IMG/VR virus record: IMGVR_UViG_3300021959_006017
Location: 1 to 64,000 of that record
Strand: one strand, 5' to 3'
DNA: 64,000 nt
Position numbers and translations under genes: made by a program. The first letter of the stretch is position 1, and each line of letters starts with the position of its first letter. Under the pieces are notes generated by a model. That model was not told where the DNA came from. It made no database searches and worked only from the letters and a program-made list of their open reading frames with translations. Positions 1,622 through 24,994 of this stretch are shown piece after piece.

Positions 1622-4600
1622 ATGGCTGATTTTAAACTTGGTAGAATTAGATTTATATGGAAGGGGGACTGGAGTGCCTCAACTACATATTACAAAGATG
1701 ACATCGTAAGGAACGGTGGTAATACATATGTATGTATAACAGGACATACATCTAGTATTAGTTTTCCAGATGATCAGTCAAACTGGAATAAAATAACAGA
1801 TGGCCAAGAGTGGAAAGCAGATTGGGCAGTTAGCACATATTATAAAGAAAACGATATTGTAAAATATGGCGGTTATTTATATATTGCAAATACTGCACAC
1901 ACTTCAGCAGTAACAGCCACAGCAGGATTAGAAAACGATCAAGCTAAATGGGATTTGTATGCTGAAGGTTTTGATTATCAAGCAGATTGGCAGCCAAACT
2001 ATCGCTACAAAATTAACGACATTGTAAAGTATAACTCAACTATCTATCTATGTACAGAAGGCCATACTTCGGCAGCAGACTCACTAACAGGTCTTGAAGT
2101 AGATCAAGACAAGTGGGATGTGTTTTCTCAAGGTGTAAGTTGGCAGGGAGATTGGCAAACTAACACAAGATATCTTGTAAATGATATTATTCGTTACGGT
2201 GGTAGAACTTATCTTTGTAACACAGGTCATGTAAGTGCTTTAACAGCAGCACTAGGACTAGAAGCAAACCAAGCAAGTTGGGATATTTTCCATGACGGTA
2301 TTGAATACAAAGGAGAATGGGCCTCTGGTACAAGATATAAACTAAACGATTTAGTAAAATCAGGCGGAGGTATTTGGATTTGTACAACATACCACACAAG
2401 TCAAAACTACCTATCAGATGATGAAGCAAAATGGGCTCAGTTTACTGAAGGTTTAGAGTTTGAAGATAGCTGGAGCGGCACACGTAGATATCAAGCAGGC
2501 GATTTTGTAACATACGGTGGTTACTCATATGTTGCTATTACAAATAACGTAGGACAACGTCCATCGGATAATCCAACAGATTGGGATCTATTTACTACTG
2601 GTTTTAGACTAGTTGGAGATTGGGGCGAAGATTCAAGTAGTTATGAATATTTTGTAGGTGATGTTGTACGTCAAGGTGGATATACATATCTATGTATTCT
2701 TGATCATACAGGACAAGAGCCTCCGAACACAACATACTGGGAAAGACTTAACCAAGGTATTGAATGGAACGATGCCTGGACAGATGCAACCGAATATGAT
2801 TTGGGCGATGCAGTGCGCTACGGAAGCAGCAGTTATATTGCAGTGCAAAAACATACTTCAGACGAAGTTGGTACACAAAACAGACCAGATCAAGATGTAA
2901 CAGGAGACTACTGGAACCTGCTATCAGGAGGAGGCGAAACACTTCCGCTTACAACTGAAGGTGATATAGTTTACTACGGCGGCGCAGGTCCAACAAGATT
3001 ACCAATCGGTGATCCAGGGCAATCACTAAGAGTAAACGCAACAGGTGATGCACCCGAGTGGAGCTTCTTTGGAAAGATTAATCACGTATGGTATACATCA
3101 ACAGACAATGGGGTTGACAGTCCAGCACCAAACTACGGTACTACACTTGATCAACCTTGGAAAACTATACGCTATGCACTAGAGCAGATTGAAAAAGGTG
3201 CTCTATATCCAAACGCTGCATATATACTCGAAGCAAATAGAGCATTTATACAAGCAGAAACAGTTGAGTGGGTTGACTATCAGATTGCAAACGTTATTGC
3301 TCCATTTACTGGATCATTTACATACACAAAAGAAACATGCCGTAGAGACGTAGGTCAAATCATTGATGCACTTATTTGGGATTTAACACACGGCGGTAAT
3401 AAGCGTATGCGTGATGCTACACTTACTTACTTTGACAGCAGCGGCGACTTAATCGCAGAAATTGCTGACGAAGATGGTGAAACATCAGCAGCACTAAAGT
3501 ATACACTAGAACTTATTGATAGTGCTATACTACAAAGTATTGATCCTGCAACAAACTATCAAACTGAAAATGCTGTAGGTAGTCCGATAACACAAGTAAA
3601 AGATTTAGCTACATATCCTGAAGAGACTGGTGCACAAACTAGACTTGATACACTGATGGCTATTGTAACAGATGCACTAGATGCAGAAAGCTCGGCAGAT
3701 GTTCCTGCTCAAGTTATTCCAAACAATTCATTGTTTGTTAAAACTGGAATTTACTCAGAAACACTTCCGATGGTTGTTCCTGTACAAACAGCAGTTGTAG
3801 GCGATGAACTACGTTCAACACGTATTACGCCAGCAGGCAGCTTAGTAGATAGTGGTGATACAACTTATACACTAGCGGGTATTGCTAGACTACAATCACT
3901 TACAGAAGATATTGTTACAAATACAGCAGTTACAAAGACAGCAGGTAATGCTGAATCACAAGTTACAACCCGTCCAGCAGGCGGAGCTAATCCTGCTATT
4001 CATGCAGCTGATTTGTGGCAACAAATTTATGATTATATTAACTGGGGTGTAAACGGTGCATCAGGTGACTCAACAGAACCTGTATTTAATGGAACAAATA
4101 CTCCTCAAACTTCAACAGACTTCACATATGCTGTTGAAGTACTAGAAGCAAACAGAACATTCTTAGTAGAGGAAGTTATTGCATACATTGCTGCTACTTA
4201 TCCTGCATATACATACGACGAAGACAGGTGTCGTAGAGATACAAACAGATATATTGACGCTATCAAATATGATCTTATATATCAGCCAGATTCTTCAGCA
4301 ACACCAGTAGAAACTAAAGGTAACTATAAGTCACTTAGTGCAGCAAGACTATATGTAAATGCTGTAAACGGATCAACTACAGAAGATATGTTCTATATGC
4401 GTAATGCTACTGGGCTAAGAAATTGTACACTAGCTGATTTAACAGGTACATTAAGTGCTGCTAATCAGTACGGAACAAGTCGTCCTACAGCTGGAGCATA
4501 TGTATCATTAGATCCAGGTTGGGGACCAGATGATTCTAGAGTTTGGGTAACAAACAAATCCCCATATGTACAAAATGTTTCAACATTCGGTACAGGTTGT

Positions 4601-6463
4601 ATAGGTCTAAAAGTAGACGGTGATCTACACAACGGTGGTAACGACTCTATTGTTGCTAACGACTTTACACAAATCTTAAGTGACGGTATTGGTTATTGGG
4701 TTACAAACTTAGGACGTTCAGAACTTGTATCTGTGTTTACATATTATAACCATATTGGTTACCTAGCAGAGAACGGTGGTAAGATCCGTGCAACAAACGG
4801 TAACAACTCATACGGTGACTTTGGTTCAGTATCAGAAGGTATTGATGACACAGAAGTTCCTGTAACTGCTGATGTAGACAACAGGACACTTGATGCTATT
4901 GTTGATAGTGTTATGACAGATGGTGATGATGTACTTGTTCTCAACTACTTAAATGCAGGACAGAACTATACAGCAGGCGGCACAACTATTAGCATTAGCG
5001 GTGAAGGTTATGGCTTAGGTACTGTAACACCTACTACTGTAAATGGTGGCGTCTTTCAAGTTAGAATGTTAGATACTGATGTAGACGGAGACAGCACAGC
5101 AGACACTGGCGGAGCCGATTATAAAGGTTCAACAAATAGTGCGCAGGAAGGTGATGCAACTAGTATTACTATTTCAAACACTGATACTGCTTTAAGTGCG
5201 CAATACATTGGTATGGCAATATATATTACAGCAGGAACAGGTGCAGGACAGTATGGATACATTAACAGCTATAACCAAGGTACAAAGGTTGCTCAAGTAT
5301 ACAAAATGAGTGATGGTACAGCTGGTTGGGATCATGTGATCGGAAATGCTATTGTAAGTGCGCTTGATGCTACAACTGAATATTCAATCGAACCGAGATT
5401 AACACTTAGTGCTCCACCAAGTGGATTATACGCAGATACTGCAAAAGGTCGTGCTATTATAGCTGACGAACAAATTGCACGTATTGTTATTTGGGATCCA
5501 GGCACAGGATACACAAGTGCTCCTACACTAACTATTACAGATCCTAACAATACTATCGAAGCACCTACTCAAGTTAGAATAGGCGACGGTGTACTTGCAC
5601 AACCTACATTCTCAGACAGAGGTACAGCATTTACTACTGCTACAGCAGAAGTAAGCGGAGACGGTTATGCAGATCAGTATCAACCAGGAGATTTTGTAGA
5701 AGTATCAAATCTTACAGAAGAACCACAGCCTGGTTCAAATATTGTGTTTAACCATTTACCAGATAAAGTGTTTAAACTTGTTACAGTAAGAGATTTTTCA
5801 GGTGCAGGTCCTTATTCAGCACAGTTACAAGTGTCACCAGAACTTACTATTACAGAAGCACCTGAACACAACGAATCCTTAGAAATGAGAATACGTTACT
5901 CTCAAGTACGTCTAACAGGTCATGACTTCTTAGACATTGGTACTGGTAACTTTTCAGAAACAAACTATCCAAATCAACCTTTGTATGATTCGGATCCAGA
6001 AAAAGAAACTACAGAATCAGGAGGAGGACGAGTGTTCTTCACCTCAACGGACCAAGATGGTAACTTTAGAGTTGGCGACTTGTTCTCCGTTGAACAGAGT
6101 ACTGGTATTGCTACACTAAATGCTGATGCATTTAATATCAGTGGTCTACAAGAACTGTCACTAGGCGAACTTGGATTAGGAAGCACAGGTGCGGTGATTA
6201 GTGAGTTTAGTACAGATGGTACGTTTACTGCTAATAGTGATAATATTGTTCCAACGCAAAAAGCTATTAAAACATATATTACTTCACAAATTGGTGGCGG
6301 CGCAGCAACACTAAACGTAAATAGTGTAACTGCTGGTCAGATTACTATTAGTGGTCAAGAAATAACCACTAACCTTGAAACCAAAATTGATGTTCAAACA
6401 GTAATGAACTTTGAAAAAGGTGTTACGGGCGTACCAGTAGCAATGAATTATTTCTTATCATAA
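1622..6463 (+). CDS. Large virion structural/tail fibre protein (1613 aa) with N-terminal Trp/Tyr-rich carbohydrate-binding-like repeats
   Basis: Eight ~50-aa repeats W.GDW...T.Y..ND.V.YGG..Y.C...HTS...W (CBM5/12-like pattern); two 'Y...CRRD...IDA...DL' modules; beta-helix-like middle (SPYVQNVSTFG...DFTQILSDGIG); Thr/Gly/Asp-rich. Confidence 0.7.
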   Translation: MADFKLGRIRFIWKGDWSASTTYYKDDIVRNGGNTYVCITGHTSSISFPDDQSNWNKITDGQEWKADWAVSTYYKENDIVKYGGYLYIANTAHTSAVTATAGLENDQAKWDLYAEGFDYQADWQPNYRYKINDIVKYNSTIYLCTEGHTSAADSLTGLEVDQDKWDVFSQGVSWQGDWQTNTRYLVNDIIRYGGRTYLCNTGHVSALTAALGLEANQASWDIFHDGIEYKGEWASGTRYKLNDLVKSGGGIWICTTYHTSQNYLSDDEAKWAQFTEGLEFEDSWSGTRRYQAGDFVTYGGYSYVAITNNVGQRPSDNPTDWDLFTTGFRLVGDWGEDSSSYEYFVGDVVRQGGYTYLCILDHTGQEPPNTTYWERLNQGIEWNDAWTDATEYDLGDAVRYGSSSYIAVQKHTSDEVGTQNRPDQDVTGDYWNLLSGGGETLPLTTEGDIVYYGGAGPTRLPIGDPGQSLRVNATGDAPEWSFFGKINHVWYTSTDNGVDSPAPNYGTTLDQPWKTIRYALEQIEKGALYPNAAYILEANRAFIQAETVEWVDYQIANVIAPFTGSFTYTKETCRRDVGQIIDALIWDLTHGGNKRMRDATLTYFDSSGDLIAEIADEDGETSAALKYTLELIDSAILQSIDPATNYQTENAVGSPITQVKDLATYPEETGAQTRLDTLMAIVTDALDAESSADVPAQVIPNNSLFVKTGIYSETLPMVVPVQTAVVGDELRSTRITPAGSLVDSGDTTYTLAGIARLQSLTEDIVTNTAVTKTAGNAESQVTTRPAGGANPAIHAADLWQQIYDYINWGVNGASGDSTEPVFNGTNTPQTSTDFTYAVEVLEANRTFLVEEVIAYIAATYPAYTYDEDRCRRDTNRYIDAIKYDLIYQPDSSATPVETKGNYKSLSAARLYVNAVNGSTTEDMFYMRNATGLRNCTLADLTGTLSAANQYGTSRPTAGAYVSLDPGWGPDDSRVWVTNKSPYVQNVSTFGTGCIGLKVDGDLHNGGNDSIVANDFTQILSDGIGYWVTNLGRSELVSVFTYYNHIGYLAENGGKIRATNGNNSYGDFGSVSEGIDDTEVPVTADVDNRTLDAIVDSVMTDGDDVLVLNYLNAGQNYTAGGTTISISGEGYGLGTVTPTTVNGGVFQVRMLDTDVDGDSTADTGGADYKGSTNSAQEGDATSITISNTDTALSAQYIGMAIYITAGTGAGQYGYINSYNQGTKVAQVYKMSDGTAGWDHVIGNAIVSALDATTEYSIEPRLTLSAPPSGLYADTAKGRAIIADEQIARIVIWDPGTGYTSAPTLTITDPNNTIEAPTQVRIGDGVLAQPTFSDRGTAFTTATAEVSGDGYADQYQPGDFVEVSNLTEEPQPGSNIVFNHLPDKVFKLVTVRDFSGAGPYSAQLQVSPELTITEAPEHNESLEMRIRYSQVRLTGHDFLDIGTGNFSETNYPNQPLYDSDPEKETTESGGGRVFFTSTDQDGNFRVGDLFSVEQSTGIATLNADAFNISGLQELSLGELGLGSTGAVISEFSTDGTFTANSDNIVPTQKAIKTYITSQIGGGAATLNVNSVTAGQITISGQEITTNLETKIDVQTVMNFEKGVTGVPVAMNYFLS
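1655..2930 (+). repeat. Eight degenerate ~50-aa tandem protein repeats within the 1613-aa CDS
   Basis: Units begin WKGDW, WKADW, YQADW, WQGDW, YKGEW, FEDSW, LVGDW, WNDAW; boundaries approximate. Confidence 0.8.
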
Positions 6464-7161: not shown

Positions 7162-8046
7162 ATGGCATCACTACGATCACTACTAGACAAAGGAAGTGTT
7201 GACTCATTAAATGCAGGACCGCAGCCAGCCTATATGGAAGGTGACTACGAGTCAATGTACTTTCATACAAGATGTACACAGCAATATGAAACATCATATG
7301 GAAAAAACTGTATTGACTGGTGGCAACTACCTTCCGACGTAACAAGCACAGTTACTATGGAAGTCTGGGGCGGCGGCGGAGGCGGCGCTGGTAGTGGAAC
7401 GTGTGGTTGTAACTTTGGTTGGCCAGGCGGGTCTGGAGCATATGTAAAGAAAACATTTACACAAGCAGAAATTGCAACAGCAAAAGGAACTTGCTATTGT
7501 ATGTGTATTTCTCCAGCAAGTTGTTGCTCGCCAAACGAAACTTGTGGATACAAAGGCTGCAAAAGCTGGATTATAGGTTCAGGACTAAGCAACTTCTGTG
7601 CAGATGGCGGAGAGCCGGGTTGTACGTTGTTCTGTATGACAGGATGTGGCGGTAACTGGACAGGTATGTGTCCACACCCAAATGATGGAACATGTGCTTG
7701 TTATTATGATTGCACAGATCCAACAGTAACTGGTGTTCCAGGTAGACATGGATTTTTATACGCAAACTTCCATTGTGACAGTAACTGGTGTTATTATTCA
7801 CAAATATTTGCAGGACCACCGTTTGACGGTAACAACGATACTGTTTATCATTTAGTAAGATTCTGCGGTAACGTAGAAGCGTATCATGATAGATGTAAAG
7901 CAGGCGGCTTTATGGCAGCAGGCATGAGAGGCGATAGCGAAAATATTCCAATCGGAGTAGGTGGTAACAGTACTAGAGTATGCGGCGACGGTTGTTGCTG
8001 CGGCTGGGGTGGCGGTCCTGGTTTAGTAAGGATAAATTGGAAGTAA
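7162..8046 (+). CDS. Cys/Gly-rich tail-tip/adhesin-like protein, paralogue 1
   Basis: MASLRSLL N-terminus, EVWGGGGGG, PGGSGAY, C-terminal GGPGLVRINWK; 27 Cys in 294 aa (hand count). Confidence 0.6.
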   Translation: MASLRSLLDKGSVDSLNAGPQPAYMEGDYESMYFHTRCTQQYETSYGKNCIDWWQLPSDVTSTVTMEVWGGGGGGAGSGTCGCNFGWPGGSGAYVKKTFTQAEIATAKGTCYCMCISPASCCSPNETCGYKGCKSWIIGSGLSNFCADGGEPGCTLFCMTGCGGNWTGMCPHPNDGTCACYYDCTDPTVTGVPGRHGFLYANFHCDSNWCYYSQIFAGPPFDGNNDTVYHLVRFCGNVEAYHDRCKAGGFMAAGMRGDSENIPIGVGGNSTRVCGDGCCCGWGGGPGLVRINWK

Positions 8047-8047
8047 A

Positions 8048-8953
8048 ATGGCAGGATTAAGAGACTTATTTGGAAAATATGAACAAGTAACACAAAGCGA
8101 AATCGATGGCGGAACTATTGAAGTTACCGGCTATGACGGTAAAATGTTTACTGTTGACACATTCTGTCATCCATCGATGAATGGTCCTACTTGTTGTGAT
8201 GCTTACAACGCAAACTTAGTTTGTTACTGGTGTGTGCCAGCAGGCACAACTGGCATGAAGATTGAAATCTGGGGCGGTGGCGGCGCCGGCGCAGGTATGC
8301 GTGGCTGTCATGGAGGTATTCCAGGTGGATCTGGTTCTTGGGCTGTAAAAAGTATTACTAGCACAGATTTTTCAGACGGTGACTGCTACTTGTTGTGTTC
8401 AGGAAACGGCGGACGTTGGTGCTGTTGTCAATGTATTGGTTGCCGTGGATGTAAATCATATGTTACAGGTAACGGATTAACTAACTTTTGTGCAGATGGC
8501 GGATTTGGCGGATATGTTAACTGCTTCTGCTATATTAGACAGTGTTGTATTTCAGGACCAAACGGTGACGGACGTGGCGTAGACTATGGCTGGCACTATA
8601 TGGGTCGTAGCGGATGCTGTTCAGAATACTTTGGTGCAGACTGCGGCGAATATGGTGTTCCAGGTTGGTATACAAACTATTGTGGTTGCGGATCAGATTG
8701 TACACCGTGTTGGGTAAAACAATGGGTTCCAAACTCACCAGGTATAGTTTCAACCGGCGGAATGCATAACGGTGTTCGTGTACAAGGTTGGGCATGTAAT
8801 AATGAATACACACAATGTTCAGTAAACGGACCAGATCACGGACACTATAACTTCCCAAGAGCAATGGGCGGTGTAAGTATGACAACATGTGGTGATGGTA
8901 CTTGCTGTGGTAACCCAGGCGGTTCTGGACAAGTAAGAATCACATATAAATAA
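8048..8953 (+). CDS. Cys/Gly-rich tail-tip/adhesin-like protein, paralogue 2
   Basis: MAGLRDLF, EIWGGGGAG, PGGSGSW, GGSGQVRITYK; 31 Cys in 301 aa (hand count). Confidence 0.6.
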   Translation: MAGLRDLFGKYEQVTQSEIDGGTIEVTGYDGKMFTVDTFCHPSMNGPTCCDAYNANLVCYWCVPAGTTGMKIEIWGGGGAGAGMRGCHGGIPGGSGSWAVKSITSTDFSDGDCYLLCSGNGGRWCCCQCIGCRGCKSYVTGNGLTNFCADGGFGGYVNCFCYIRQCCISGPNGDGRGVDYGWHYMGRSGCCSEYFGADCGEYGVPGWYTNYCGCGSDCTPCWVKQWVPNSPGIVSTGGMHNGVRVQGWACNNEYTQCSVNGPDHGHYNFPRAMGGVSMTTCGDGTCCGNPGGSGQVRITYK

Positions 8954-8962
8954 GGACAGGAA

Positions 8963-9796
8963 ATGGCAAGTTTAAGAGATTTACTAAACATAGAAACAGC
9001 AGCAGATCTAGCAGGACAAGCCGGCGCTGTACCTGGAAAACAATGGGTAGCACAGGCTACATGTCAGCAGTGTCAGTTTGACTCTTACGGTGACTGGTGT
9101 TGTAACGTGTTTATTGTTCCATCAGGTACATCAGAGATTATTTTCGATGTATGGGGCGGCGGTGGCGGCGGTGGCCGTTCAGCATGCTGTGGCGCAGGTG
9201 GACCAGGTGGATCCGGTGCTTGGGCACGTAGATGTATTAATAGTGAAGAGTTTGGCATAGGCGATTGTTATAGAGTTACAGTCGGTCGTGCTACTTACTG
9301 CTCACAAGATCAGACAGGATGCGCAGGTAACTATAGCTGTGTATGTAGTATTGAAAACGACTTTGTAAGAGTTTGTTCAGAAGGCGGCGGACGTGGATGC
9401 TGGTATTGTTTTGCAGATTGCTGTACAACTAATGCATACTGCACATGTGAGCAAAAATGTGCTTACGGTGGAGACATTAACGTAAAAGGACACCCAGGTT
9501 GTTTCTGGCACAGATGTTTAGAAGATCACTGCTATGACAAGATAGGTTTTGCTTATCCAGGCGGACTTAACAACAAATGTGGCGGCGTTGTTTGGACACA
9601 AGTATGCTGTAAATATGCACACGGCTCAGCACTACAAAACTATGCAATAGGTATACTTGGTAGTACTGCAGGAAGCCAATATTGCTGTAACGGTTATATG
9701 CCAGGAGTAGGCGGCGGAACAATGCCAACAGAAGACGGTGTATGTCGCTGTGGACTACAAGGTACACCAGGATTAGTAAGAGTAACATATAGATAA
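8963..9796 (+). CDS. Cys/Gly-rich tail-tip/adhesin-like protein, paralogue 3
   Basis: MASLRDLL, DVWGGGGGGG, PGGSGAW, GTPGLVRVTYR; 30 Cys in 277 aa (hand count). Confidence 0.6.
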   Translation: MASLRDLLNIETAADLAGQAGAVPGKQWVAQATCQQCQFDSYGDWCCNVFIVPSGTSEIIFDVWGGGGGGGRSACCGAGGPGGSGAWARRCINSEEFGIGDCYRVTVGRATYCSQDQTGCAGNYSCVCSIENDFVRVCSEGGGRGCWYCFADCCTTNAYCTCEQKCAYGGDINVKGHPGCFWHRCLEDHCYDKIGFAYPGGLNNKCGGVVWTQVCCKYAHGSALQNYAIGILGSTAGSQYCCNGYMPGVGGGTMPTEDGVCRCGLQGTPGLVRVTYR

Positions 9797-9808: not shown

Positions 9809-10684
9809 ATGGAAATTATAACAGAAGATTTTACATACAATGTTCCAGATAGTTACCTAAGTACTGCAACAACAGAAGGTAAAACTAACACTCTTACCTA
9901 TACAGGACCTAATGAAATATGGGTATTTGTTGATAAAGTTTCAGGAAAACTGGACTGGAGTATGCATGCACTTATTAACTTTGACGAAGGAATGCAAGAA
10001 ATAGCAATAACTCATGCAGGACAATATCATAAACCAATACTTGTTCATTTCGATCAAAATCCTTTGATTTGTTGGGCAATGTATGGCGATCTTGATTGGG
10101 ATTCTTTAGGAGAAAAAACGTTCACACTTGACGGAGAAACTGAGCCTTATTATAGACACCCTGATCCTTTACCACCACAACTGATTTATGATTATCCTTC
10201 TTTTGTATATTTGTTTGATAGCAGCACTTGGAAACAACCTTATCCTATGCAAACACCTAAACAAACACAGGACGATGTTGAAGGATATATAGCTGCATAC
10301 ATAGCAGATATTGAAAAACATATTGCTGACTCTAACAGTGGTTTAACAGCTGATCAAAAAACAACAATGACAGCAGCTAAAACTACAGCAGAAGGTATTG
10401 TAGCAAAATATGGTCCAGACGGAGCAAATGTTCCTTATTGGATGTGGCCACCTTGTCCTCCTACACCAGATTGGGATCCTAATATGGAAGAAGACACTGA
10501 TGTACCAGAAGCAGAACGTTGGGATTCAGCAGCTGATGGCTCAGAAGGTGCGGGTGCTGAAACTAACTATCAGCCAGAAAATAACGAACCTACTCCAGCA
10601 TCAGAAAGCGAAGCATTTCCTAACACAGATAGCCAGCAAACTGAAGCAGGTGAACTACCAGACGAAGACGCTCCAACAGAATAA
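9809..10684 (+). CDS. Hypothetical protein, possible tail-fibre assembly chaperone, with acidic disordered tail
   Basis: Last gene of the fibre transcription unit; helical segment followed by W.WPP.P motif as in Tfa-like chaperones; D/E/P-rich C-terminus. Confidence 0.4.
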   Translation: MEIITEDFTYNVPDSYLSTATTEGKTNTLTYTGPNEIWVFVDKVSGKLDWSMHALINFDEGMQEIAITHAGQYHKPILVHFDQNPLICWAMYGDLDWDSLGEKTFTLDGETEPYYRHPDPLPPQLIYDYPSFVYLFDSSTWKQPYPMQTPKQTQDDVEGYIAAYIADIEKHIADSNSGLTADQKTTMTAAKTTAEGIVAKYGPDGANVPYWMWPPCPPTPDWDPNMEEDTDVPEAERWDSAADGSEGAGAETNYQPENNEPTPASESEAFPNTDSQQTEAGELPDEDAPTE

Positions 10685-10691
10685 AATAGAT

Positions 10692-10723
10692 AAAAAAGGC
10701 TTCATTTCTAGAAGCCTTTTTTT
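10692..10723. terminator. Bidirectional rho-independent terminator
   Basis: AAAAAAGGCTTC-atttcta-GAAGCCTTTTTTT. Confidence 0.8.
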
Positions 10724-10744: not shown

Positions 10745-10752
10745 TATAAATA
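10745..10752 (+). promoter_or_regulatory. Late promoter TATAAATA, 5 nt before ATG 10758
   Basis: Exact T4 late consensus directly after the terminator. Confidence 0.7.
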
Positions 10753-10757
10753 TTTGC

Positions 10758-11345
10758 ATGGAAGATCCAAGAGATGAATATCGTATATTACCAAATCTTT
10801 TACCTAAATCCTATGCAGATCTTTTAGAAGCTGAACTTTCTAAAATACATTGGTATTGGTATCCAAGTGCTTCAGGAGATGTTGCTGTAGATCCCGATGA
10901 CAAAAATATTTTTGATTCTCCCCAAATGCAACATGTTTTTATTGAAGAAAATGAACCAATATCTCCGTATGCTTCTCTAATACAACCAGTAGTTTGGTTT
11001 TTAGAAAAAGAAATGCAAATGAGTATTAAAAATATTGTACGTGTAAAAGCAAATCTTTTAATGCCAGGTAGATCAAACTTAGATAACTATAATATTCCTC
11101 ATGTTGATTCTCCAAGCGACGATTATATTAGCATGGTTTATTATGTAAACAATGCAGACGGTGATACTAAAATATTTCACAAAACACTTGACGAAGGACA
11201 CAAAGACTTATATACTATAGCAGGCATTAGTCCTAAGAAAGGAAGAGCTGTAATGTTTAAATCAAATAGATTTCATGCAAGCACACCCCCGTTTAAAGCT
11301 GATAAAAGAATAGTATTAAACTTTGTATTACAACCAGGAACATAA
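10758..11345 (+). CDS. 2OG-Fe(II) oxygenase
   Basis: PHVD (HxD), SMVYYVNNADGDT, FHAS..P...KRIVLNF (distal His and Arg). Confidence 0.8.
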   Translation: MEDPRDEYRILPNLLPKSYADLLEAELSKIHWYWYPSASGDVAVDPDDKNIFDSPQMQHVFIEENEPISPYASLIQPVVWFLEKEMQMSIKNIVRVKANLLMPGRSNLDNYNIPHVDSPSDDYISMVYYVNNADGDTKIFHKTLDEGHKDLYTIAGISPKKGRAVMFKSNRFHASTPPFKADKRIVLNFVLQPGT

Positions 11346-11347
11346 AA

Positions 11348-12391
11348 ATGACAGATAGAGCAAAAGCCTTTTTTATTAATGGAGGTGCAGGCAGGGTGCT
11401 TGCTAGTATTCCAGCATTAGAAAAGTATTATGAAGAAACTAGCCAAGACTTTATTATTGTAGCAGAAGGCGGAATGGACCTCTATAAAGGTCATCCAATA
11501 CTACATGAACGTGCATATGATGTTTGGCATAAAGGAATATTCCAAGACAAAATTAAAAATATGGATGTAGTAACTCCAGAACCATACAGAGTGTGGGAGT
11601 ACTACAATCAAAAATGTAACCTACAACAAGGTTTTGATATAGAAATAAACGGTAAAGGTATAAGAGATCTTCCAAGACCTTTTATACATTTAACACAAGA
11701 AGAAAAAGTAAATGGTAAAGCATGCATTAAAGAGGTATTAGATAATGTAGGTTTTAATAAAACTATCGTATTCCAACCATTTGGAAGAGGCATAGGAGAA
11801 CACGCAGGGTTTTTAACAGATCCAAGTGGAAGAAGTTTTGAATATGCAAATATAATAAGCATTGTGAAGAAGTTACAAGAAAAAGAGTTTGCAGTTATTT
11901 TAATGAGTGAACTAAACTTAGACTTCCAAAAAGAAGGAACGCCGAAACCTGTTGCACAGCCAAGTGGAATAGGTTTAAAGCAGTGGGCAGCTATTATTGC
12001 CGAAGCAGACTATTTCTTAGGCTGCGATAGTGTGGGACAACATATTGCACACAGTTTAAATAAACCTGCTACAGTAGTAACTGGTAGCACTTTTGCTGAA
12101 AATGTTAGTTTTTTAGATGATGAAAAGTTTGATATTCAAGACATGGGAGAAAGTAAAAGAAAATATGATCCTATTAGAATAGTACCAGACGAAGTTGTTG
12201 CAAAAAACAACGATGGTATAATGGCTATGAATGGTCCCATTGAAGACGAGATTATTAAAAACTTAATAAAAAACTTTGAAAAATATGTAAAAAAAGAAAC
12301 TACAGTAAAAAAGAAAGTTTCTGAACTTACTAACAAAACAAACAATACAGCACCTAAGCTGGTGCCTGGTTTATCACCTATTAAGGAATAA
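11348..12391 (+). CDS. GT-B glycosyltransferase, GT9 (heptosyltransferase)-like
   Basis: N-terminal GGAGRVLASIPAL and C-terminal WAAIIAEADYFLGCDSVGQHIAHSLNKPATVVTGST, matching the GT9 'L..AA.I..A..F.G.DSG..H.A.A...P...L.G.T' pattern. Confidence 0.65.
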   Translation: MTDRAKAFFINGGAGRVLASIPALEKYYEETSQDFIIVAEGGMDLYKGHPILHERAYDVWHKGIFQDKIKNMDVVTPEPYRVWEYYNQKCNLQQGFDIEINGKGIRDLPRPFIHLTQEEKVNGKACIKEVLDNVGFNKTIVFQPFGRGIGEHAGFLTDPSGRSFEYANIISIVKKLQEKEFAVILMSELNLDFQKEGTPKPVAQPSGIGLKQWAAIIAEADYFLGCDSVGQHIAHSLNKPATVVTGSTFAENVSFLDDEKFDIQDMGESKRKYDPIRIVPDEVVAKNNDGIMAMNGPIEDEIIKNLIKNFEKYVKKETTVKKKVSELTNKTNNTAPKLVPGLSPIKE

Positions 12392-12393
12392 AA

Positions 12394-14187
12394 ATGAGCG
12401 AAGAAAATAAAGACATTTGGATTGCAGGTATTACAAGAGGACATAATGGAGGTGTCTGTTTATTAAAAAACGGCGAAGTTATATTTGCTACTGAAGAAGA
12501 ACGTTATTCTCGGTACAAGTATGATGGCGGACCACTAGCTAGTATGCTTAAAATTAAAGAATATACAGATAAACTTGATTATATAGTTGTTGCTCACACG
12601 CAAAGTTTAAAAGATACAGCAGGTATTATTGATTTCTCAGGCGATGACATGTATACTGGTTGGGCAAGAAAGTTAGGCCTTATAGAAAGAAAGAATGTAG
12701 ATTTAAGAAATCACCCACAAGTAATGGATCTAAGCCACATGCATCATAGACTACATGCTGCTTGTGCTTTTTATAGATCTGGATTTGACGAAGCAGTAGC
12801 CGTTATTGTTGATGGCGCCGGTACTTTTATTCCAATGCAAATAAATGAGAATGAACATGCATACGGATTTGAAGTTGAAAGTTTATTCGACTGTTCTTAT
12901 CCTGCAAACTTTGCTACTTTATTTAAAAGTATAGGACTTAAAAATGGCGGAGTTCGTACTCAAATAGATAATGTAGAAACTTTTGGAGAAGAATACGAAA
13001 GCGTTATACATGATAGAGCAGGTATTGTTAAAGTGTATGAAGCTGTTACTGAGTTTTGTGGATTTCCTGCTATTGAAGCAGGTAAAACTATGGGACTATT
13101 TCCGTACGGTGAACCTAACGAAAATATTCCACCGTTGTTTGAAAAAGGCGGTCGTGTTAGATTAAGTAATAGAAATGTTATTATACCAACGTATCCTAAC
13201 TCTGCACTAGTAAACTTTCAACAATATGATGAACTAAAAGACGGTTTAGCAAGTGACTTAACTAAGTTACAAAATCGCAGAGATCTAGCATATGCTGTCC
13301 AGACACAATCACAAGATCAGGTTGTAGAATATATTCGTCAGGCTGTTGCAATGAGTGGTAAAAAGAATGTTGTTATTTCAGGCGGCTATGGATTAAACTG
13401 TGTTGCTAACTATCATTACTTAGAAGCACTCAAAGACGAAGATATTAACATATATGTAGAACCTGTTAGTAATGATGCAGGCACAGCTATAGGTGGTGCA
13501 CTAATGACATATTACCATTTGTCTGAAAGCACTGAAAATAAAGGTATTAACCATAACTTATATTTAGGTATTCCTTATACTTATGAAATAGACGAGATTG
13601 AATCATTAGCACAAGAATACGGAGCAACAGTAACAGATGCTACAAATGAAGATGTAGTTGATTTAATCACTAGTAAAAACATTGTAAGTGTATTCCAAGG
13701 AGGATCAGAATCAGGACCTAGAGCACTTGGTAACAGAAGTATACTTTATGATCCAACAGATCCAGATGGAAAAGATTTTGTTAATACTGTAAAACGCAGA
13801 GAATACTTCCGTCCGTTTGCTGGTAGTATCCTTGAAGAAGATGTACACGAATGGTTTGATTTACGTGGTATGGAAAGCTCACCTACAATGATGTATGCTG
13901 TAAACTGTCAGCCAGGCATTGAAGAAAAGATTCCTGCTATTATTCATGTAGACGGTACTTGTCGTATACAAACTGTTAATAGAGAACAAAATGCAAACTA
14001 TTATGATTTGATTAAAGCCTTTAAAGAAAAGACAGGCTGTCCGATTATCTTTAATACTAGCTTTAACTTAGGCGGTGAACCATTAGTAGAAACACTAGAA
14101 GATGCATTTTGGACACTACAGCAAAGTGATATTGAATACTGTTATCTTCCAGAATATGGTAAGTTGTTGTCAATCAAAAACGCATAA
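12394..14187 (+). CDS. O-carbamoyltransferase (NodU/CmcH/TobZ family)
   Basis: GHNGGVCL..EEERYSRYK, HHRLHA..AF..SGF, VDGAG, EAGKTMGL.PYG, GG..LNCVAN, DAGTAIG, ESGPRALGNRSIL, KRRE.FRPFA, HVDGTCRIQTV, NTSFNL.GEPLVET. Confidence 0.93.
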   Translation: MSEENKDIWIAGITRGHNGGVCLLKNGEVIFATEEERYSRYKYDGGPLASMLKIKEYTDKLDYIVVAHTQSLKDTAGIIDFSGDDMYTGWARKLGLIERKNVDLRNHPQVMDLSHMHHRLHAACAFYRSGFDEAVAVIVDGAGTFIPMQINENEHAYGFEVESLFDCSYPANFATLFKSIGLKNGGVRTQIDNVETFGEEYESVIHDRAGIVKVYEAVTEFCGFPAIEAGKTMGLFPYGEPNENIPPLFEKGGRVRLSNRNVIIPTYPNSALVNFQQYDELKDGLASDLTKLQNRRDLAYAVQTQSQDQVVEYIRQAVAMSGKKNVVISGGYGLNCVANYHYLEALKDEDINIYVEPVSNDAGTAIGGALMTYYHLSESTENKGINHNLYLGIPYTYEIDEIESLAQEYGATVTDATNEDVVDLITSKNIVSVFQGGSESGPRALGNRSILYDPTDPDGKDFVNTVKRREYFRPFAGSILEEDVHEWFDLRGMESSPTMMYAVNCQPGIEEKIPAIIHVDGTCRIQTVNREQNANYYDLIKAFKEKTGCPIIFNTSFNLGGEPLVETLEDAFWTLQQSDIEYCYLPEYGKLLSIKNA

Positions 14188-14211
14188 ATACTCTGTAAGT
14201 TCGGAGTTGAG

Positions 14212-14607
14212 ATGAATATTGATGACTATTTAACTAATGGATTAAATGACACACTTCTTGTAAAAAACAACGGAGGGTTTAGTCATAACGGTCCTTGGAA
14301 AAATTTGCAGAGTGATACTCTAGTTGATAGATATTATATTGGAGATATAAGTTCTGCAGAATATACTATTAGTATTGATTTAAACTCTGATAACAAAGAA
14401 ATCTTTAAATGTTTAGTTACGAGCAGTTTAAACGAAGCAAAAGTAGTAGTGTTTGCTCGTAACTATACAAACAATAGCCTTGCTGAAGTTTATGCTTTAG
14501 TAAACAATCAATATGTAGAACTTTACATTAACCCTAAAAACGATGCATTTAAAGCATCGAGATTTATTCACACAGCACAATACTTTCACAATCTTCATCA
14601 ACTCTAA
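14212..14607 (+). CDS. Hypothetical protein (late region)
   Basis: 131-aa ORF with GGAG RBS, preceded by CATAAATA at 14183 overlapping the upstream stop. Confidence 0.55.
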   Translation: MNIDDYLTNGLNDTLLVKNNGGFSHNGPWKNLQSDTLVDRYYIGDISSAEYTISIDLNSDNKEIFKCLVTSSLNEAKVVVFARNYTNNSLAEVYALVNNQYVELYINPKNDAFKASRFIHTAQYFHNLHQL

Positions 14608-14649
14608 GTAAGTATTTGATTCTGATAAATACAATAGTTGGAGTATGAG

Positions 14650-15543
14650 ATGAAGAAAGCCGCCAATACAGCATTTGAGTCAGATTATGGATTTAAAAGT
14701 CCTAGTTTCAGTGTAGATGCGCTTGGTAATATTATTGCAAATAGCATTAGTACCACAGAACCCATTGGCAGTGGAGCTGATGGAAGTTCGGGTATTTCAA
14801 ACTTTATTGTAACAGAAAATTTAAGCAACACAGCGTTTTTGTTTACTGGTAATGATTCTCCAAATCCAACAATACAGTTACAAAGAGGAACAACTTATAC
14901 CTTTGATTTACAACTTGAAGATCTAGAACTATTTATATATGAATCGGATGGTTCTACACCTTATCAAAATATTTTAGATGATCAAGGAAACACAGGGTTA
15001 TTAGCACAAGGTAAAAAAACTGGTCTAATACAAATAACTATTACAAGTTCCACAACAAATCCGTTAATATATAAAGACGATTCGGGTGATGTTACAGGAC
15101 AGTTTGAGGTAGTTAATCCTACTGGCGTGTTTGGTGGTCTATCAGTTACAAATACAACGCAATCAACAGGTATTGGAACAGGTTCTCTACAAGTATCCGG
15201 CGGCGCAAGCATTGCCAAAGATTTATATCTAGGCGGAAGTTTAATTTTAGATAGCACTGGCGATGTAAAGTTTGATAGTGCTTCTAATCTTACACTTGGA
15301 GCAGTTAACAAGGTTATTATAGTTATTAATGGCAATAAGCTAGGAGAGATAACTAGCGAAGGTATAGAAACACCGATAGCAAATACAACAATAGATAATA
15401 CTGTGATAGGATCTGCAACACCAACAACAGCAACATTTACCAATGCTGATGTCACAGAAGTTCCAACTACGGTAAATAATGTAACAAACAAAGCATATGT
15501 AGATCAGCAAGATATTGCATTAACAATAGCACTTGGAAGTTAA
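14650..15543 (+). CDS. Virion structural protein
   Basis: ATG 14650 follows GGAG; NPTIQLQRGTTYTFD and TGSLQVSGGASIAKDLYLGG fibre-type motifs; NKAYVD...IALTIALG C-terminus; GATAAATA at 14624. Confidence 0.6.
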   Translation: MKKAANTAFESDYGFKSPSFSVDALGNIIANSISTTEPIGSGADGSSGISNFIVTENLSNTAFLFTGNDSPNPTIQLQRGTTYTFDLQLEDLELFIYESDGSTPYQNILDDQGNTGLLAQGKKTGLIQITITSSTTNPLIYKDDSGDVTGQFEVVNPTGVFGGLSVTNTTQSTGIGTGSLQVSGGASIAKDLYLGGSLILDSTGDVKFDSASNLTLGAVNKVIIVINGNKLGEITSEGIETPIANTTIDNTVIGSATPTTATFTNADVTEVPTTVNNVTNKAYVDQQDIALTIALGS

Positions 15544-15546
15544 TAA

Positions 15547-18500
15547 ATGGCAAAAAGAAAAATAGATAATTATGTTTTTAGTCCAGGAATGTCCTACAAA
15601 GACAATCTTGTTCCTAATGCGTATTCACTTATAGACAGTAATACAAACTATATTATTGCAGAAGCAATATCATGGATACAGCAAGAAATAGATGCAGATA
15701 ATGCACCGTTTATAGGGTACACTTACAACCAATCCAAGTGCGAAAGAGATATTGGTTTTATACTAAGTAGTTACAAGAATGATCTACGCTATGGCGGCAA
15801 CGAAAAAACAAGATTATATGCCCAAAAGTATTGGGAAGGTTCTGTATCTCAGTTAGACGGTGATAGACAGCCCGAGGTAGTAACTCATACTTACATTAAA
15901 AATCTTATCAATAACTATATTCTAACAAATACGGCATTTACAAGTTTAAGCGACGAAACCCAAGTTATTGATACAACAAAAACAGCAGAAGCAAGTGCAT
16001 CTACTACAATAACTACGCTTTCAACATTTTTAGTTGATGTTATAGAAAACGGATTAGGACAGCTTCCAACACTTGATCCTAATACATTTGGTTATGTTAA
16101 GATGCAAGGAAAGTATAATCTTTCTGATATACTTCTTATTACTAACAATACAACCAATGACGTTATATTCAACTTTACTAACAACGACACTGGTGCAGTT
16201 ATTGAAGTCAAAGACGCACAGACTGTAGATAACTCACAAGACGTTGACTTTCCAAAGTACCTACAAACAACAGACGGCGTTACAACTCTAAAGCTAAATG
16301 CAAGCACTGCTTCGCAATCTGCAGATGATGATTTACAAATATTTGTTGAATACACAGAAAACGGAAAAAGTTTAACTGTAACTAGACCGTACGACTTTGG
16401 TACAGATGCTATTGAACGTATGCGTGTTGCACCTGCACTATCAATGCTTGACGCTGACTTTGAGTACGGACTACAGCCTACCAAATGGTCTGCTATCGGT
16501 ATGATGCGCGGCTATCCTAGTATTTATGAAGTCCCAGGATCTGAACTAAATGTATCATCTGTAACTACTGATGCATCAGCAGGTACAGGCGGAGTAGGTC
16601 AAAGTTTAGTAACAGTGAACACTGTTTCACCACATGGATTTACTCCAGGCAAGCCTATAACAATCAAAGCACTAGAAAATAGTGTAGCGGGAGCATCAAG
16701 AGCAGAAGGTAGTTTTGTAATTGTTGAAACACCTAGTACACGATCCTTTAGATATTATGCAAAAGCAAAAGTAGGCACAACAAGCGGCGAAGTACTTAGT
16801 ACAACATATACTCAGCTTCGCGCAGCAGGATTTTATACTGGTTCAAATATAAGTTCAAACCCTGTGTTTACTGTTGAAAGTAATGGTTTTAGCGGAACGA
16901 TGGTTGCAGAACTAACTGTTCCAACAGGTGAAACAAGAATACCATATGATGGAAACACCCCAGAACTAGGTGCTCCACTAGTACATGCTGGCGGAAATAT
17001 CCCAACAGGTTCTCAGGTTACTCAATCTATTACACAATCGTCAGGCGGCGGTACATATTTAACAGCAGGTATTGCACAAGATATTTCTAATGGTTCGAAT
17101 ACATTTACAGTTACAGATGCAACAGGTATTATCACAGATTTAGCTATTGATAGAGGTGACGGTGTTGCAGCATTTATAACAAACATTATAGGTGAAGATA
17201 TTACAATAAGTGATAACTTCACAAGAGATATTTCAGGTACTACTGTTACCTATAGCGGTGTATCAGCAGCTCCAGAAACTGGCGTTGGTTTTAATGCAAA
17301 GTTTGATGTATCATGGACCGGAGGTACATATACTGTAGCAGTTGGCGCAGGCATAAATGACGCAGGTGAAGCATACGAGGTTGGGGATAAAATACGCATA
17401 TTAGGTAGCGATGTAGGCGGGTTTAGTCCCGATAATGATATTATTATTACAGTTGACGGAATATTTAGCTTAGGTTCTATTAATGCACTTACAGCAACAG
17501 GTACAGCATTTGATGGAACTGGTAATTTACCAGGAGAACAACCTCCTGTTGAAGGTGGATTAGGTTTTGGTTCAATATTTGATGTTACATATACTGATAA
17601 TACATATGGTAGTGTTACTATAGATACATCGGGCGAATCATATACTGCAAATGATGTTATTGTTATTGATGGTAATAACTTTCTTGGAGGCTCATCAGGA
17701 ACAAATGATGCAACAGTTAAAGTAACAACAGTTGACGGATCAGGAGGTATTACTGCTGCAACAGTAACAGGTACAGCACCGAATGCAAGTGTAAACTATG
17801 GTGTTGATAACGTTGATATTACATACGTATATAGCGGAACAACTGGTTCGGGTGCAGAGTTTACTGTAACTAGAAACGGTACTGTGTATAGTGCTTCTAT
17901 TGATGTTGCAGGTTCAAACTATTTGCCTACAGAAACATTTACTATTGACGGTGCAAACTTAGGTGGTGTAACAACAACTAACGATTGTATTATTACAGTT
18001 GATAATGTCGGCGGATCTGGCGAAATATCTGCAGTTAGTGTTTCAGGTACAGCAGCTAACACAGATACAAAGTTAGCTGTTTCAGGCACAAACTTGTCAG
18101 GTACAGGGGCTATATTTACAATAGATATTGCAGCTGGAGTATATTCTGTAACTATTGATGATGGTGGTTTTGATTACGCAACAAACCAAACTTTTGTTAT
18201 AGAAGGTACATCTTTAGGAGGCACTACACCTACAAACGATGCAACTATTACAGTTAGTACAGTAGATGCTAGTGGAACTATTACAGGAGCAACTATAGCT
18301 GGTACAGCTATAACAGATACAGGTAGTGTAACTTCAGTTGGAGGTACTAACGAGTTACCTGAAGGAGACGGTGCAACATTTGATGTTGTTAGATCAGCAA
18401 GTGCATATTCTGTAACTGTTATTGACCAAGGTACACTGTATACCAACGGCAATAGAATGATTATTACAGGAGACCTCCTTGGTGGACAATCTCCATTACA

Positions 18501-24960: not shown

Positions 24961-24965
24961 GCTTT

Positions 24966-24994
24966 ATTATACTATACCTTTATATTTTAGTCAA
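24966..24994 (-). promoter_or_regulatory. Sigma70-type promoter TTGACT-N17-TATAAT for the heptose operon
   Basis: Minus strand: -35 at 24994-24989, -10 at 24971-24966, 5 nt before the hldE ATG. Confidence 0.7.

What the first reader, a model, noticed from the sequence alone, without database searches (positions are those of the whole stretch)
10745..14187. Late-promoter oxygenase / GT9 / carbamoyltransferase cassette inserted among tail-fibre genes
Seen: an exact TATAAATA late motif drives three closely packed enzyme genes directly after the Cys-rich cluster, and structural genes resume right after. Inference: a sequential hydroxylate, glycosylate, carbamoylate line acting on a virion protein, analogous to protein heptosylation of autotransporters by ADP-heptose-dependent Aah/TibC enzymes and sugar O-carbamoylation by NodU/TobZ. 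A DNA hypermodification role is an alternative.
Basis: partly seen in the sequence, partly recalled or inferred. Interest (0 to 1): 0.68.

Follow-up and report, generated by a model that had tools for sequence, protein, structure and literature searches.

The report
Phage tail-fibre heptose-carbamoyl modification cassette
A T4-like marine cyanophage carries, inside its tail-fibre gene block and under its own late promoter, an oxygenase, a divergent heptosyltransferase-like enzyme and a carbamoyltransferase that most likely decorate a fibre-associated virion protein with phage-made heptose, a function never tested for these genes.

Summary
A hairpin terminator (10692-10722), an exact TATAAATA (10745-10752) and three tightly packed genes (10758-14187) lie between fibre-module genes and large structural genes. 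The genes encode a prolyl-hydroxylase-like 2OG-Fe(II) oxygenase, a GT-B protein whose closest solved folds are all GT9 heptosyltransferases (Z 18-23, against 12.6 or less for other GT-B folds), and a two-domain NodU/TobZ carbamoyltransferase.

New support: HldE-, GmhB- and HldD-like ADP-heptose genes lie 7-11 kb downstream. In 80 related viral loci the GT9-like gene is followed by the carbamoyltransferase in 78. It travels with a cluster of Cys/Gly-rich proteins and the tail fibre. The reverse search recovers it in every locus with enough flank. A distant homolog sits between tail genes in an N4-like vibriophage.

Corrections: the oxygenase is a lineage-specific accessory (11 of 80 loci, variable position), not an obligatory first step. 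The transferase has an invariant Arg where WaaC and WaaF have the catalytic Asp. The acceptor is not shown.

Cultured relatives (P-SSM2, S-SSM7, S-CAM1/3) carry the same pair, published as 'LPS genes' of unknown role. Best reading: late heptosylation plus carbamoylation of a fibre-module protein (confidence about 0.45).

The parts
10692..10722 (.). Terminator-like hairpin (12-pair stem) followed by a T-run, closing the upstream transcription unit
   Evidence: conserved with a compensatory stem change in L005 and L012
10745..10752 (+). T4-type late promoter motif TATAAATA, 5 nt before the ATG, which implies a leaderless or near-leaderless mRNA
   Evidence: NATAAATA is the published cyanomyovirus late motif (PMC2984593)
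10758..11345 (+). 2OG-Fe(II) oxygenase, prolyl-hydroxylase-like (H115-x-D117, H173, R184); an accessory, lineage-specific member of the cassette
   Evidence: present in 11 of 80 related loci
11348..12391 (+). GT-B glycosyltransferase of the GT9 (heptosyltransferase) structural family. The donor-site motif D227-S-x-G-Q-H232 and R162 are kept; Arg16 replaces the catalytic Asp
12394..14187 (+). NodU/CmcH/TobZ-family O-carbamoyltransferase with Kae1-like and YrdC-like domains and an HxxxH motif at 117-121
14184..14190 (+). Next late-promoter core (ATAAATA), overlapping the end of the carbamoyltransferase gene and serving the following structural gene
7162..9796 (+). Three paralogous Cys/Gly-rich proteins (27-31 Cys each, PF21722/phrog_4205). 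They always co-occur with the GT9-like/carbamoyltransferase pair and are the candidate acceptors
9809..10684 (+). phrog_9740 protein with an acidic disordered tail. It lies directly upstream of the transferase in most relatives; there is a weak lead to tail assembly chaperones
1622..6463 (+). Long tail fibre protein (phrog_9851) that opens the module
14212..21360 (+). Structural genes that resume after the cassette: a 131-aa protein, a fibre-like protein of about 297 aa, and a 1937-aa virion structural protein
21357..22022 (-). GmhB-like heptose 1,7-bisphosphate phosphatase (HAD-IIIA)
21949..22356 (-). Cupin protein (annotated 'cysteine dioxygenase' in relatives) that travels with the heptose genes
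22346..23164 (-). HldD-like ADP-glyceromanno-heptose 6-epimerase
23139..23714 (-). DUF6445 protein, a second 2OG-oxygenase-like type; the same type sits upstream of the transferase in S-SSM7
23704..24960 (-). HldE-like bifunctional heptose 7-phosphate kinase / heptose 1-phosphate adenylyltransferase

Best explanation
The cassette is a late-expressed tailoring unit of the tail-fibre module. The phage makes its own ADP-heptose with the HldE-, GmhB- and HldD-like enzymes encoded 7-11 kb downstream. The GT9-family transferase (11348-12391) puts heptose on a protein of the fibre or adhesin module. The prime candidates are the Cys/Gly-rich PF21722 proteins that always accompany it. The NodU/TobZ-type enzyme (12394-14187) then O-carbamoylates that sugar, as WapO is thought to do on heptose II of the Pseudomonas LPS core. 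The 2OG oxygenase (10758-11345) is an optional extra tailoring step, acting on the protein or the sugar, that this lineage recruited.

Shown: the enzyme families, the promoter and terminator architecture, and the linkage.

Inferred: the donor, the order of steps and the acceptor.
For: Enzyme identity:
- The GT-B model has pLDDT 79. All eleven best structural matches are GT9 members (3tov, WaaF, WaaC, TibC, plant PnsB1) at Z 17.8-22.7; the next folds score 12.6 or less.
- Donor-site residues are kept: WaaC K192, D261 and H266 correspond to R162, D227 and H232.
- The carbamoyltransferase has both domains and matches PDB 7xb6 at E 2e-52 and TobZ at 1e-37.

Donor:
- The best NCBIfam hits of the downstream genes are HldE (7e-104), GmhB (2e-36) and HldD (1e-67).
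- In P-SSM2, S-SSM7 and S-CAM3 the heptose genes directly follow the pair.
- Cyanobacterial LPS lacks heptose and Kdo (PMC4515613). This would explain why the phage brings the pathway. Distant homologs in Vibrio and Aeromonas phages come without it.

Linkage to fibre genes:
- The carbamoyltransferase follows in 78 of 80 loci. Cys/Gly-rich proteins are present in 61 of 67, and the tail fibre in 61 of 80.
- Starting from the Cys/Gly-rich proteins, the GT9-like gene is found in 46 of 57 loci. The other 11 all end within 2.4 kb.
- Adjacency survives an inversion (L009).
- The vibriophage homolog lies between 'tail fiber protein' and 'tail family protein'.

Timing: a late promoter with positional enrichment and conservation.

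Oxygenase: the fold is closest to the protein prolyl hydroxylases PHD2, Pseudomonas P4H and PBCV-1 vCPH. Two different oxygenase subfamilies have been recruited next to the pair.

Precedent for carbamoyl-heptose: WapO (PMC8005017).
Against: - No acceptor is demonstrated, and the complex prediction gave no verdict.
- The residue aligned with the catalytic Asp of WaaC and WaaF is an invariant Arg, including in the distant phage homologs. Catalysis must differ or may be lost.
- Pfam GT9 is below its gathering score for this protein.
- GmhA was not found in the 236-kb contig, which CheckV rates 67% complete.
- The heptose genes score below the NCBIfam cut-offs.
- Co-inheritance within one phage lineage inflates the synteny counts.
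- Heptose genes also occur in cyanophages without this transferase.
- No virion proteome covers a carrier of the cassette. The published ones are S-SM1, S-PM2 and Syn9 (PMC3037559).
Confidence: 0.45

Rival explanations
1. Host-surface remodelling. The enzymes, with the phage heptose pathway, alter a host envelope glycan (LPS or another polysaccharide) during infection, for example to block superinfection. This is the published idea for the 'LPS genes' of P-SSM2.
For: - GT9 enzymes classically build the LPS inner core, and WapO carbamoylates LPS heptose (PMC8005017).
- The literature files these genes as LPS clusters and proposes cell-surface alteration (PMC2984593, PMC3037559).
- A second nucleotide-sugar gene group lies at about 213-215 kb of the contig.
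Against: - Expression comes from a late promoter inside the structural module.
- Cyanobacterial LPS lacks the Kdo/heptose core that GT9 enzymes act on (PMC4515613).
- The acceptor-activating Asp is replaced.
- Linkage to fibre-module proteins is near-absolute, and also holds in an N4-like vibriophage.
Confidence: 0.2
2. The GT9-like protein is no longer an enzyme. It would serve as a fibre assembly factor or structural subunit, as the GT9-like PnsB1 does in plant NDH. The carbamoyltransferase and heptose genes would then act on something else.
For: - Invariant Arg at the catalytic Asp position.
- The plant NDH subunit is among the best structural matches, Z 17.8-19.1.
- The vibriophage homolog lies among tail genes without any sugar genes.
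- Neighbouring proteins give weak leads to tail assembly chaperones.
Against: - The donor-site motif D-S-x-G-Q-H and R162 are invariant across 32 family members.
- Coupling to the carbamoyltransferase is tight, with a 2-nt gap here and 78 of 80 loci overall.
- ADP-heptose genes are recurrently adjacent.
Confidence: 0.12
3. A soluble product. The pathway makes a carbamoylated, possibly oxidised heptose nucleotide or small glycoconjugate (a metabolite or signal), not a modified macromolecule of the virion.
For: - Solved NodU/TobZ relatives are antibiotic-tailoring enzymes: TobZ, GdmN and the novobiocin enzyme.
- Oxygenase fold matches also include the sugar- or nucleoside-tailoring enzymes SnoN and PolD.
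Against: - There is no scaffold-biosynthesis gene nearby.
- Position and timing are those of structural genes.
- Co-occurrence with the Cys/Gly-rich proteins is left unexplained.
Confidence: 0.1
4. DNA hypermodification. The oxygenase creates a hydroxyl on a base, and the transferase and carbamoyltransferase then decorate it.
For: - Phage DNA glycosyltransferases can be GT-B enzymes.
- In some other cyanophages a more distant carbamoyltransferase lies next to thymidylate synthase.
Against: - There is no Tet_JBP match, although that search's controls were also blank.
- The only ThyA-family gene is a genuine thymidylate synthase above the equivalog cut-offs and lies 180 kb away.
- The oxygenase fold is PHD/P4H-like and the gene is absent from most cassettes.
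- Late expression comes after replication.
- The location is in the fibre module, not with replication genes.
Confidence: 0.05

Closest known systems
LPS inner-core heptosyltransferases WaaC/WaaF (CAZy GT9)
   Same: GT-B fold with the best structural matches at Z 19-21. It shares the C-terminal D-[ST]-x-G-x-H donor motif, a basic residue at the K192 position, and association with ADP-heptose biosynthesis genes.
   Different: Arg replaces the catalytic Asp13. Pfam GT9 is below threshold. The host has no Kdo/heptose core to act on. The gene lies in a phage tail-fibre module under a late promoter (PMC4515613).
Autotransporter heptosyltransferases TibC/Aah (BAHT)
   Same: A GT9-type fold (Z 18.5-18.6) that uses ADP-heptose on a protein acceptor.
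   Different: The phage protein aligns only to TibC residues 91-397, so it lacks the N-terminal extension. It has three Cys in all, so no four-Cys iron site. There is no autotransporter partner.
WapO (PA5005) of the Pseudomonas core-oligosaccharide cluster
   Same: A carbamoyltransferase-family enzyme encoded alongside heptosyltransferases and held to put a carbamoyl group on heptose II (PMC8005017). It is the only described heptosyltransferase-plus-carbamoyltransferase pairing I found.
   Different: The substrate there is LPS. No sequence comparison was made here, because no WapO sequence was on hand.
NodU / TobZ / GdmN O-carbamoyltransferases
   Same: The two-domain architecture and strong sequence matches.
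   Different: Known substrates are Nod factors and antibiotics. The phage enzyme is far below the NodU equivalog cut-off (140 against 1000 bits).
'LPS gene clusters' of large cyanomyoviruses (P-SSM2, S-SSM7, S-SM2; T4-GC 302-308)
   Same: These are the same genes. The GT9-like protein is 47-59% and the carbamoyltransferase 48-62% identical, in the same order and with the same flanks.
   Different: In those records the transferase is 'hypothetical protein'. The clusters were discussed as host-surface genes or 'stuffer DNA' (PMC3037559, PMC2984593). The oxygenase at the head of the cassette is specific to this lineage.
Viral hydroxylation and glycosylation of structural proteins (PBCV-1 vCPH prolyl hydroxylase; mycobacteriophage virion glycosylation)
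   Same: The oxygenase model matches vCPH and other protein prolyl hydroxylases. Phage-encoded glycosyltransferases that decorate virions are a described kind; one search lists papers citing it.
   Different: The sugar, enzyme families and phage group all differ, and nothing here has been shown biochemically.

Membership tests
GT9 heptosyltransferase family (Pfam PF01075 / CAZy GT9) | GT-B fold closest to solved GT9 enzymes | tested here: met
   VIA-align gives Z 22.7 (3tov), 20.9 (WaaF), 19.6 (WaaC) and 18.6 (TibC). Other GT-B folds score 12.6 or less. The Foldseek top hits are the same.
GT9 heptosyltransferase family (Pfam PF01075 / CAZy GT9) | Score above Pfam's gathering threshold | tested here: not met
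   17.8 bits against a cut-off of 22 and 18.2 bits in the genome search. The distant vibriophage homolog passes at 25.4 bits.
GT9 heptosyltransferase family (Pfam PF01075 / CAZy GT9) | Donor-site residues (WaaC K192, D261, H266) | tested here: met
   R162, D227 and H232 are invariant in 32 family members and align with the WaaC and WaaF residues.
GT9 heptosyltransferase family (Pfam PF01075 / CAZy GT9) | Catalytic base Asp in the N-terminal G-D motif (WaaC D13) | tested here: not met
   The aligned residue is Arg16. It is invariant in the cyanophage family and also Arg in the Vibrio and Aeromonas phage homologs.
GT9 heptosyltransferase family (Pfam PF01075 / CAZy GT9) | Use of ADP-heptose as donor | not testable with these tools
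   Context only: HldE-, GmhB- and HldD-like genes lie nearby and are adjacent in relatives.
BAHT protein heptosyltransferases (TibC/Aah) | N-terminal extension and four-Cys iron site | tested here: not met
   The model aligns to TibC 91-397 only. The protein has three Cys in total. That these features define the family is my recollection of the TibC structure papers.
NodU/CmcH/TobZ carbamoyltransferases | Kae1-like N domain plus YrdC-like C domain, with a metal-binding HxxxH | tested here: met
   PF02543 at E 1.5e-28 and PF16861 at E 7.6e-58. HxxxH is at 117-121. PDB matches are 7xb6, GdmN and TobZ.
2OG-Fe(II) oxygenases, prolyl-hydroxylase-like branch | HxD...H iron triad, basic 2OG-binding residue, double-stranded beta-helix fold | tested here: met
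   H115, D117, H173 and R184 are invariant in 33 sequences. PF13640 scores above its cut-off. The model has pLDDT 95, with PHD2, P4H and vCPH as top matches.
T4-type late promoter | (N/T)ATAAATA placed just upstream of late genes, more often than chance | tested here: met
   38 of 67 cores lie sense-upstream within 45 nt, against 7 antisense. The motif is conserved in relatives and matches the published cyanomyovirus motif (PMC2984593).
T4-type late promoter | Late sigma gp55 and co-factors encoded by the phage; transcription start mapped | not tested
   gp55 was not searched for in this contig. The literature says all cyanomyoviruses have g55 (PMC2984593).
ADP-L-glycero-D-manno-heptose pathway | GmhA, HldE, GmhB and HldD all present | tested here: inconclusive
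   HldE, GmhB and HldD are the best hits but fall below the curated cut-offs. GmhA was not found by PF13580 or by tblastn with three phage GmhA proteins. The contig is rated 67% complete.

The most novel reading that the evidence does not exclude
T4-like cyanophages, and some N4-like vibriophages, have a dedicated clade of GT9-type transferases, with Arg in place of the catalytic Asp, that glycosylate receptor-binding fibre proteins. In cyanophages the sugar would be phage-made heptose, then carbamoylated, on Cys/Gly-rich tip proteins. This would be a virion modification not described for any phage. Because the usual base is missing, the linkage may be unusual, for instance to a thiol or an acidic group.
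Probability: 0.3. Interest if true: 0.8.

Novelty: new variant of a known kind. Interest (0 to 1): 0.55.

Why it matters
Large marine cyanomyoviruses are among the most abundant viruses in the ocean. Their 'LPS genes' have lacked a tested function since 2005 and have even been called possible stuffer DNA. Here the heptosyltransferase-like/carbamoyltransferase pair turns out to be a fixed part of the tail-fibre module, late-expressed and inseparable from a family of Cys/Gly-rich proteins. That turns a vague annotation into a direct experiment on cultured phages (S-CAM3, S-SSM7, P-SSM2). If the fibres carry carbamoyl-heptose, it would add a new layer to host recognition in cyanophage-host coevolution. 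It would also define a new acceptor class and catalytic variant for GT9 enzymes.

Tried and rejected
- Nucleotide search of the cassette against cultured phages found nothing, so protein searches were needed.
- Sequence and profile searches of the transferase against PDB sequences gave nothing useful. Only fold comparison placed it.
- The complex prediction of the GT9-like protein (1-320) with the Cys/Gly-rich protein 8048-8953 gave no verdict (score 0.01, partner poorly folded). It counts neither way.
No reads were laid.
- GmhA was sought by Pfam SIS_2 and by tblastn with three phage GmhA proteins and was not found.
- The Tet_JBP search was blank, but its controls were blank too, so it says little.
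- tblastn with a Cys/Gly-rich protein against cultured phages reached only S-CAM1 and S-CAM3. It was too insensitive for a co-occurrence test, so IMG/VR loci were used instead.
- The protein-atlas look-up of the 9809-10684 protein gave only sub-threshold leads (0.86) to tail assembly chaperone clusters.
- The supplement look-up for P-SSM2 expression classes returned no held files, and a second paper had no relevant text.
- The PHROG label 'DNA endonuclease V' for the oxygenase was rejected as a propagated misannotation.
- The exhaustive representative-protein search was not run, as the family scans and fold search sufficed.


Full report
**What the window is.** The window is the first 64 kb of a 236,751-bp IMG/VR viral contig, rated 67% complete by CheckV. 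Gene content and protein matches place it among T4-like cyanomyoviruses. Its best cultured relatives are S-SSM7, S-CAM1/3 and P-SSM2, at 47-62% amino-acid identity for the genes studied here.

**The observation.**
- An exact TATAAATA lies at 10745-10752.
- It is followed by ORFs at 10758-11345, 11348-12391 and 12394-14187, with 2-nt gaps between them.
- Upstream lie a long tail fibre gene (1622-6463), two small genes, three Cys/Gly-rich paralogs (7162-9796; 27-31 Cys and 17-20% Gly each) and a 291-aa gene (9809-10684). The cassette is therefore one gene removed from the Cys-rich cluster, not directly after it.
- Downstream, structural genes resume, including a 1937-aa virion structural protein.

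**Is the promoter real?**
- The 8-mer alone is not enriched in the window: 5 found against 8.5 expected.
- Genome-wide, 38 of the 67 ATAAATA cores lie in sense orientation within 45 nt upstream of an ORF start. Such windows make up about 3% of the sequence, and only 7 cores lie antisense in them.
- NATAAATA is the published late motif of cyanomyoviruses (PMC2984593).
- A 12-pair hairpin with a T-run (10692-10722) ends the upstream unit.
- In two relatives whose oxygenase is only 55-61% identical, the arrangement of hairpin, TATAAATA, 5 nt and ATG is kept, with a compensatory change in the stem.
- The next late core overlaps the end of the carbamoyltransferase gene. The three genes thus form a discrete late unit.
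- With T4 geometry (motif at -13 to -6; my knowledge of T4), a 5-nt spacer puts the transcription start on the A of the ATG. This implies a leaderless mRNA.

**The three proteins.**

*Oxygenase.* It passes Pfam 2OG-FeII_Oxy_3. It has an invariant H115-x-D117, H173 and R184. It folds with pLDDT 95 into a model whose best matches are the protein prolyl hydroxylases PHD2, Pseudomonas P4H and PBCV-1 vCPH. The sugar- or nucleoside-tailoring enzymes SnoN and PolD follow close behind.

*Transferase.* It is weak in Pfam GT9 (E 0.002, below threshold) and silent against PDB sequences. Its model (pLDDT 79) nonetheless matches only GT9 structures at the top: Z 22.7 to 17.8 for 3tov, WaaF, WaaC, TibC and plant PnsB1, with a clear gap to other GT-B folds at 12.6 or less. 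Alignment with E. coli WaaC and WaaF gives this picture:

| WaaC residue | Role | Phage residue |
|---|---|---|
| K192 | donor site | R162 (kept as basic) |
| D261 | donor site | D227 (kept) |
| H266 | donor site | H232 (kept) |
| D13 | catalytic base | R16 (replaced) |

Arg16 is invariant in the family and is also present in the distant Vibrio and Aeromonas phage homologs. I therefore describe it as a GT9-fold transferase of a distinct Arg-type clade, not as a standard member.

*Carbamoyltransferase.* It is a full two-domain NodU/TobZ enzyme.

**The sugar.**
- Seven to eleven kb downstream, on the minus strand, lie genes whose best NCBIfam hits are GmhB (2e-36), HldD (1e-67) and HldE (7e-104). 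A cupin, a DUF6445 oxygenase-like protein and a NUDIX protein lie among them.
- In P-SSM2, S-SSM7 and S-CAM3 the heptose genes directly follow the transferase/carbamoyltransferase pair.
- GmhA was not found here.
- Cyanobacterial LPS is reported to lack heptose and Kdo (PMC4515613). This gives the phage a reason to carry the pathway and removes the classical GT9 acceptor from the host.
- The Vibrio and Aeromonas phage homologs come without sugar genes. As far as I know, LPS of those hosts contains heptose.

**Linkage.**
- In 80 IMG/VR loci holding a relative of the transferase, the carbamoyltransferase follows on the same strand in 78. The other two loci end within 1.3 kb.
- Cys/Gly-rich proteins are present in 61 of the 67 loci with enough upstream flank.
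- The 9809-10684 homolog is present in 73 loci and the tail fibre in 61.
- Heptose genes are present in 23 of the 51 loci with enough downstream flank.
- The reverse search starts from the Cys/Gly-rich proteins. It finds the transferase in 46 of 57 loci, and all 11 exceptions end within 2.4 kb of the match.
- Adjacency survives an inversion of the pair relative to the cluster (L009).
- In the N4-like vibriophage SBP1 the homolog lies between 'tail fiber protein' and 'tail family protein'.

These counts are not phylogenetically independent.

**The oxygenase is an accessory.**
- Its subfamily is present in only 11 of the 80 loci: twice before the transferase and nine times right after the carbamoyltransferase.
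- More distant homologs sit near ribonucleotide reductase genes.
- S-SSM7 has a different oxygenase type (DUF6445) before its transferase.
- In 35 of 78 loci, one or two copies of an unknown family of about 300 aa lie between the transferase and the carbamoyltransferase.

The conserved core is therefore transferase plus carbamoyltransferase, with variable tailoring genes around it. A fixed sequence of hydroxylation, then glycosylation, then carbamoylation is unlikely.

**Mechanism I commit to.** Late in infection, phage-made ADP-heptose is transferred by the Arg-type GT9 enzyme to a protein of the fibre module, most likely the Cys/Gly-rich proteins. The sugar is then O-carbamoylated. The oxygenase adds an optional modification. 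The precedent for carbamoyl-heptose is WapO of Pseudomonas (PMC8005017).

| Claim | Confidence |
|---|---|
| Enzyme classes | about 0.85 |
| Heptose as the sugar | about 0.7 |
| A virion protein as the target | about 0.45 |

**Rivals.**
- Host-surface remodelling, the published idea (PMC2984593, PMC3037559).
- A non-catalytic assembly role for the GT9-like protein, suggested by the Arg substitution and the PnsB1 precedent.
- A soluble product.
- DNA hypermodification. This is weak. There is no TET/JBP match. The only ThyA-family gene is a genuine thymidylate synthase far away. Timing is late, and the location is structural.

**What could not be done.**
- The complex prediction gave no verdict.

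**Novelty.** The genes themselves are known from cultured cyanophages, where the transferase is 'hypothetical'. The clusters were discussed as LPS genes or possible stuffer DNA (PMC3037559). Three things are new here:
- the structural assignment to an Arg-type GT9 clade;
- its strict coupling to a fibre-module protein family;
- the late, probably leaderless, transcription unit.

I rate this a new variant of a known kind, of moderate interest, and readily testable on existing isolates.

Noticed in passing
window 10746, 28014(-), 33941, 47388, 62135; also genome positions 85093(-), 100409, 161913, 199749: Nine late-promoter cores have exactly 5 nt between ATAAATA and an ATG. About one would be expected from 67 cores. 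With T4 geometry, transcription would start on the A of the start codon, so this phage may make a set of leaderless late mRNAs.
   Followed up: partly
window 7162-9796: Three tandem paralogs of about 280-300 aa carry 27-31 Cys and 17-20% Gly. They share a conserved N-terminus (M-A-x-L-R-x-L), a W-G-G-G-G-G run and a conserved C-terminal motif (PF21722/phrog_4205). In one related contig they alternate with Phage_tail_APC chaperone-like proteins, which suggests a family of fibre-tip adhesins.
   Followed up: partly
window 10758-11345 and RefSeq records of Syn9, S-SSM7, ACG-2014b and others: phrog_274 and many cyanophage records name this family 'DNA endonuclease V (denV)'. The protein is a 2OG-Fe(II) oxygenase by Pfam, by its iron triad and by a pLDDT-95 model. 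The label looks like a propagated misannotation.
   Followed up: yes
L009:5325-6254, L024:11006-11920, L020:11004-12805 and others: An unknown protein family of about 280-310 aa, with no Pfam match, lies in one or two copies between the GT9-like gene and the carbamoyltransferase in 35 of 78 related loci. It is absent from this genome. It may be a further tailoring enzyme of the same pathway.
   Followed up: partly
L011:7007-7741 (Vibrio virus SBP1) and L010:6995-7918 (Aeromonas phage HJ05): Distant homologs (26-29% identity) of the GT9-like protein carry the same G-R and P-E-P-Y motifs. They occur in N4-like vibriophages among tail genes, without carbamoyltransferase or heptose genes.
   Followed up: partly
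genome 212964-215251 (outside the window); window 47403-47618 and 55457-55759: Further cytidylyltransferase-, epimerase- and cupin-like genes point to a second nucleotide-sugar gene group in the same phage.
   Followed up: no
window 21357-25421, minus strand: The heptose gene block lies between the 1937-aa structural gene and the gp15 tail-sheath stabiliser gene, and it includes a NUDIX hydrolase and a DUF6445 oxygenase-like gene. No GmhA was found, so the first pathway step is unaccounted for in this contig.
   Followed up: partly
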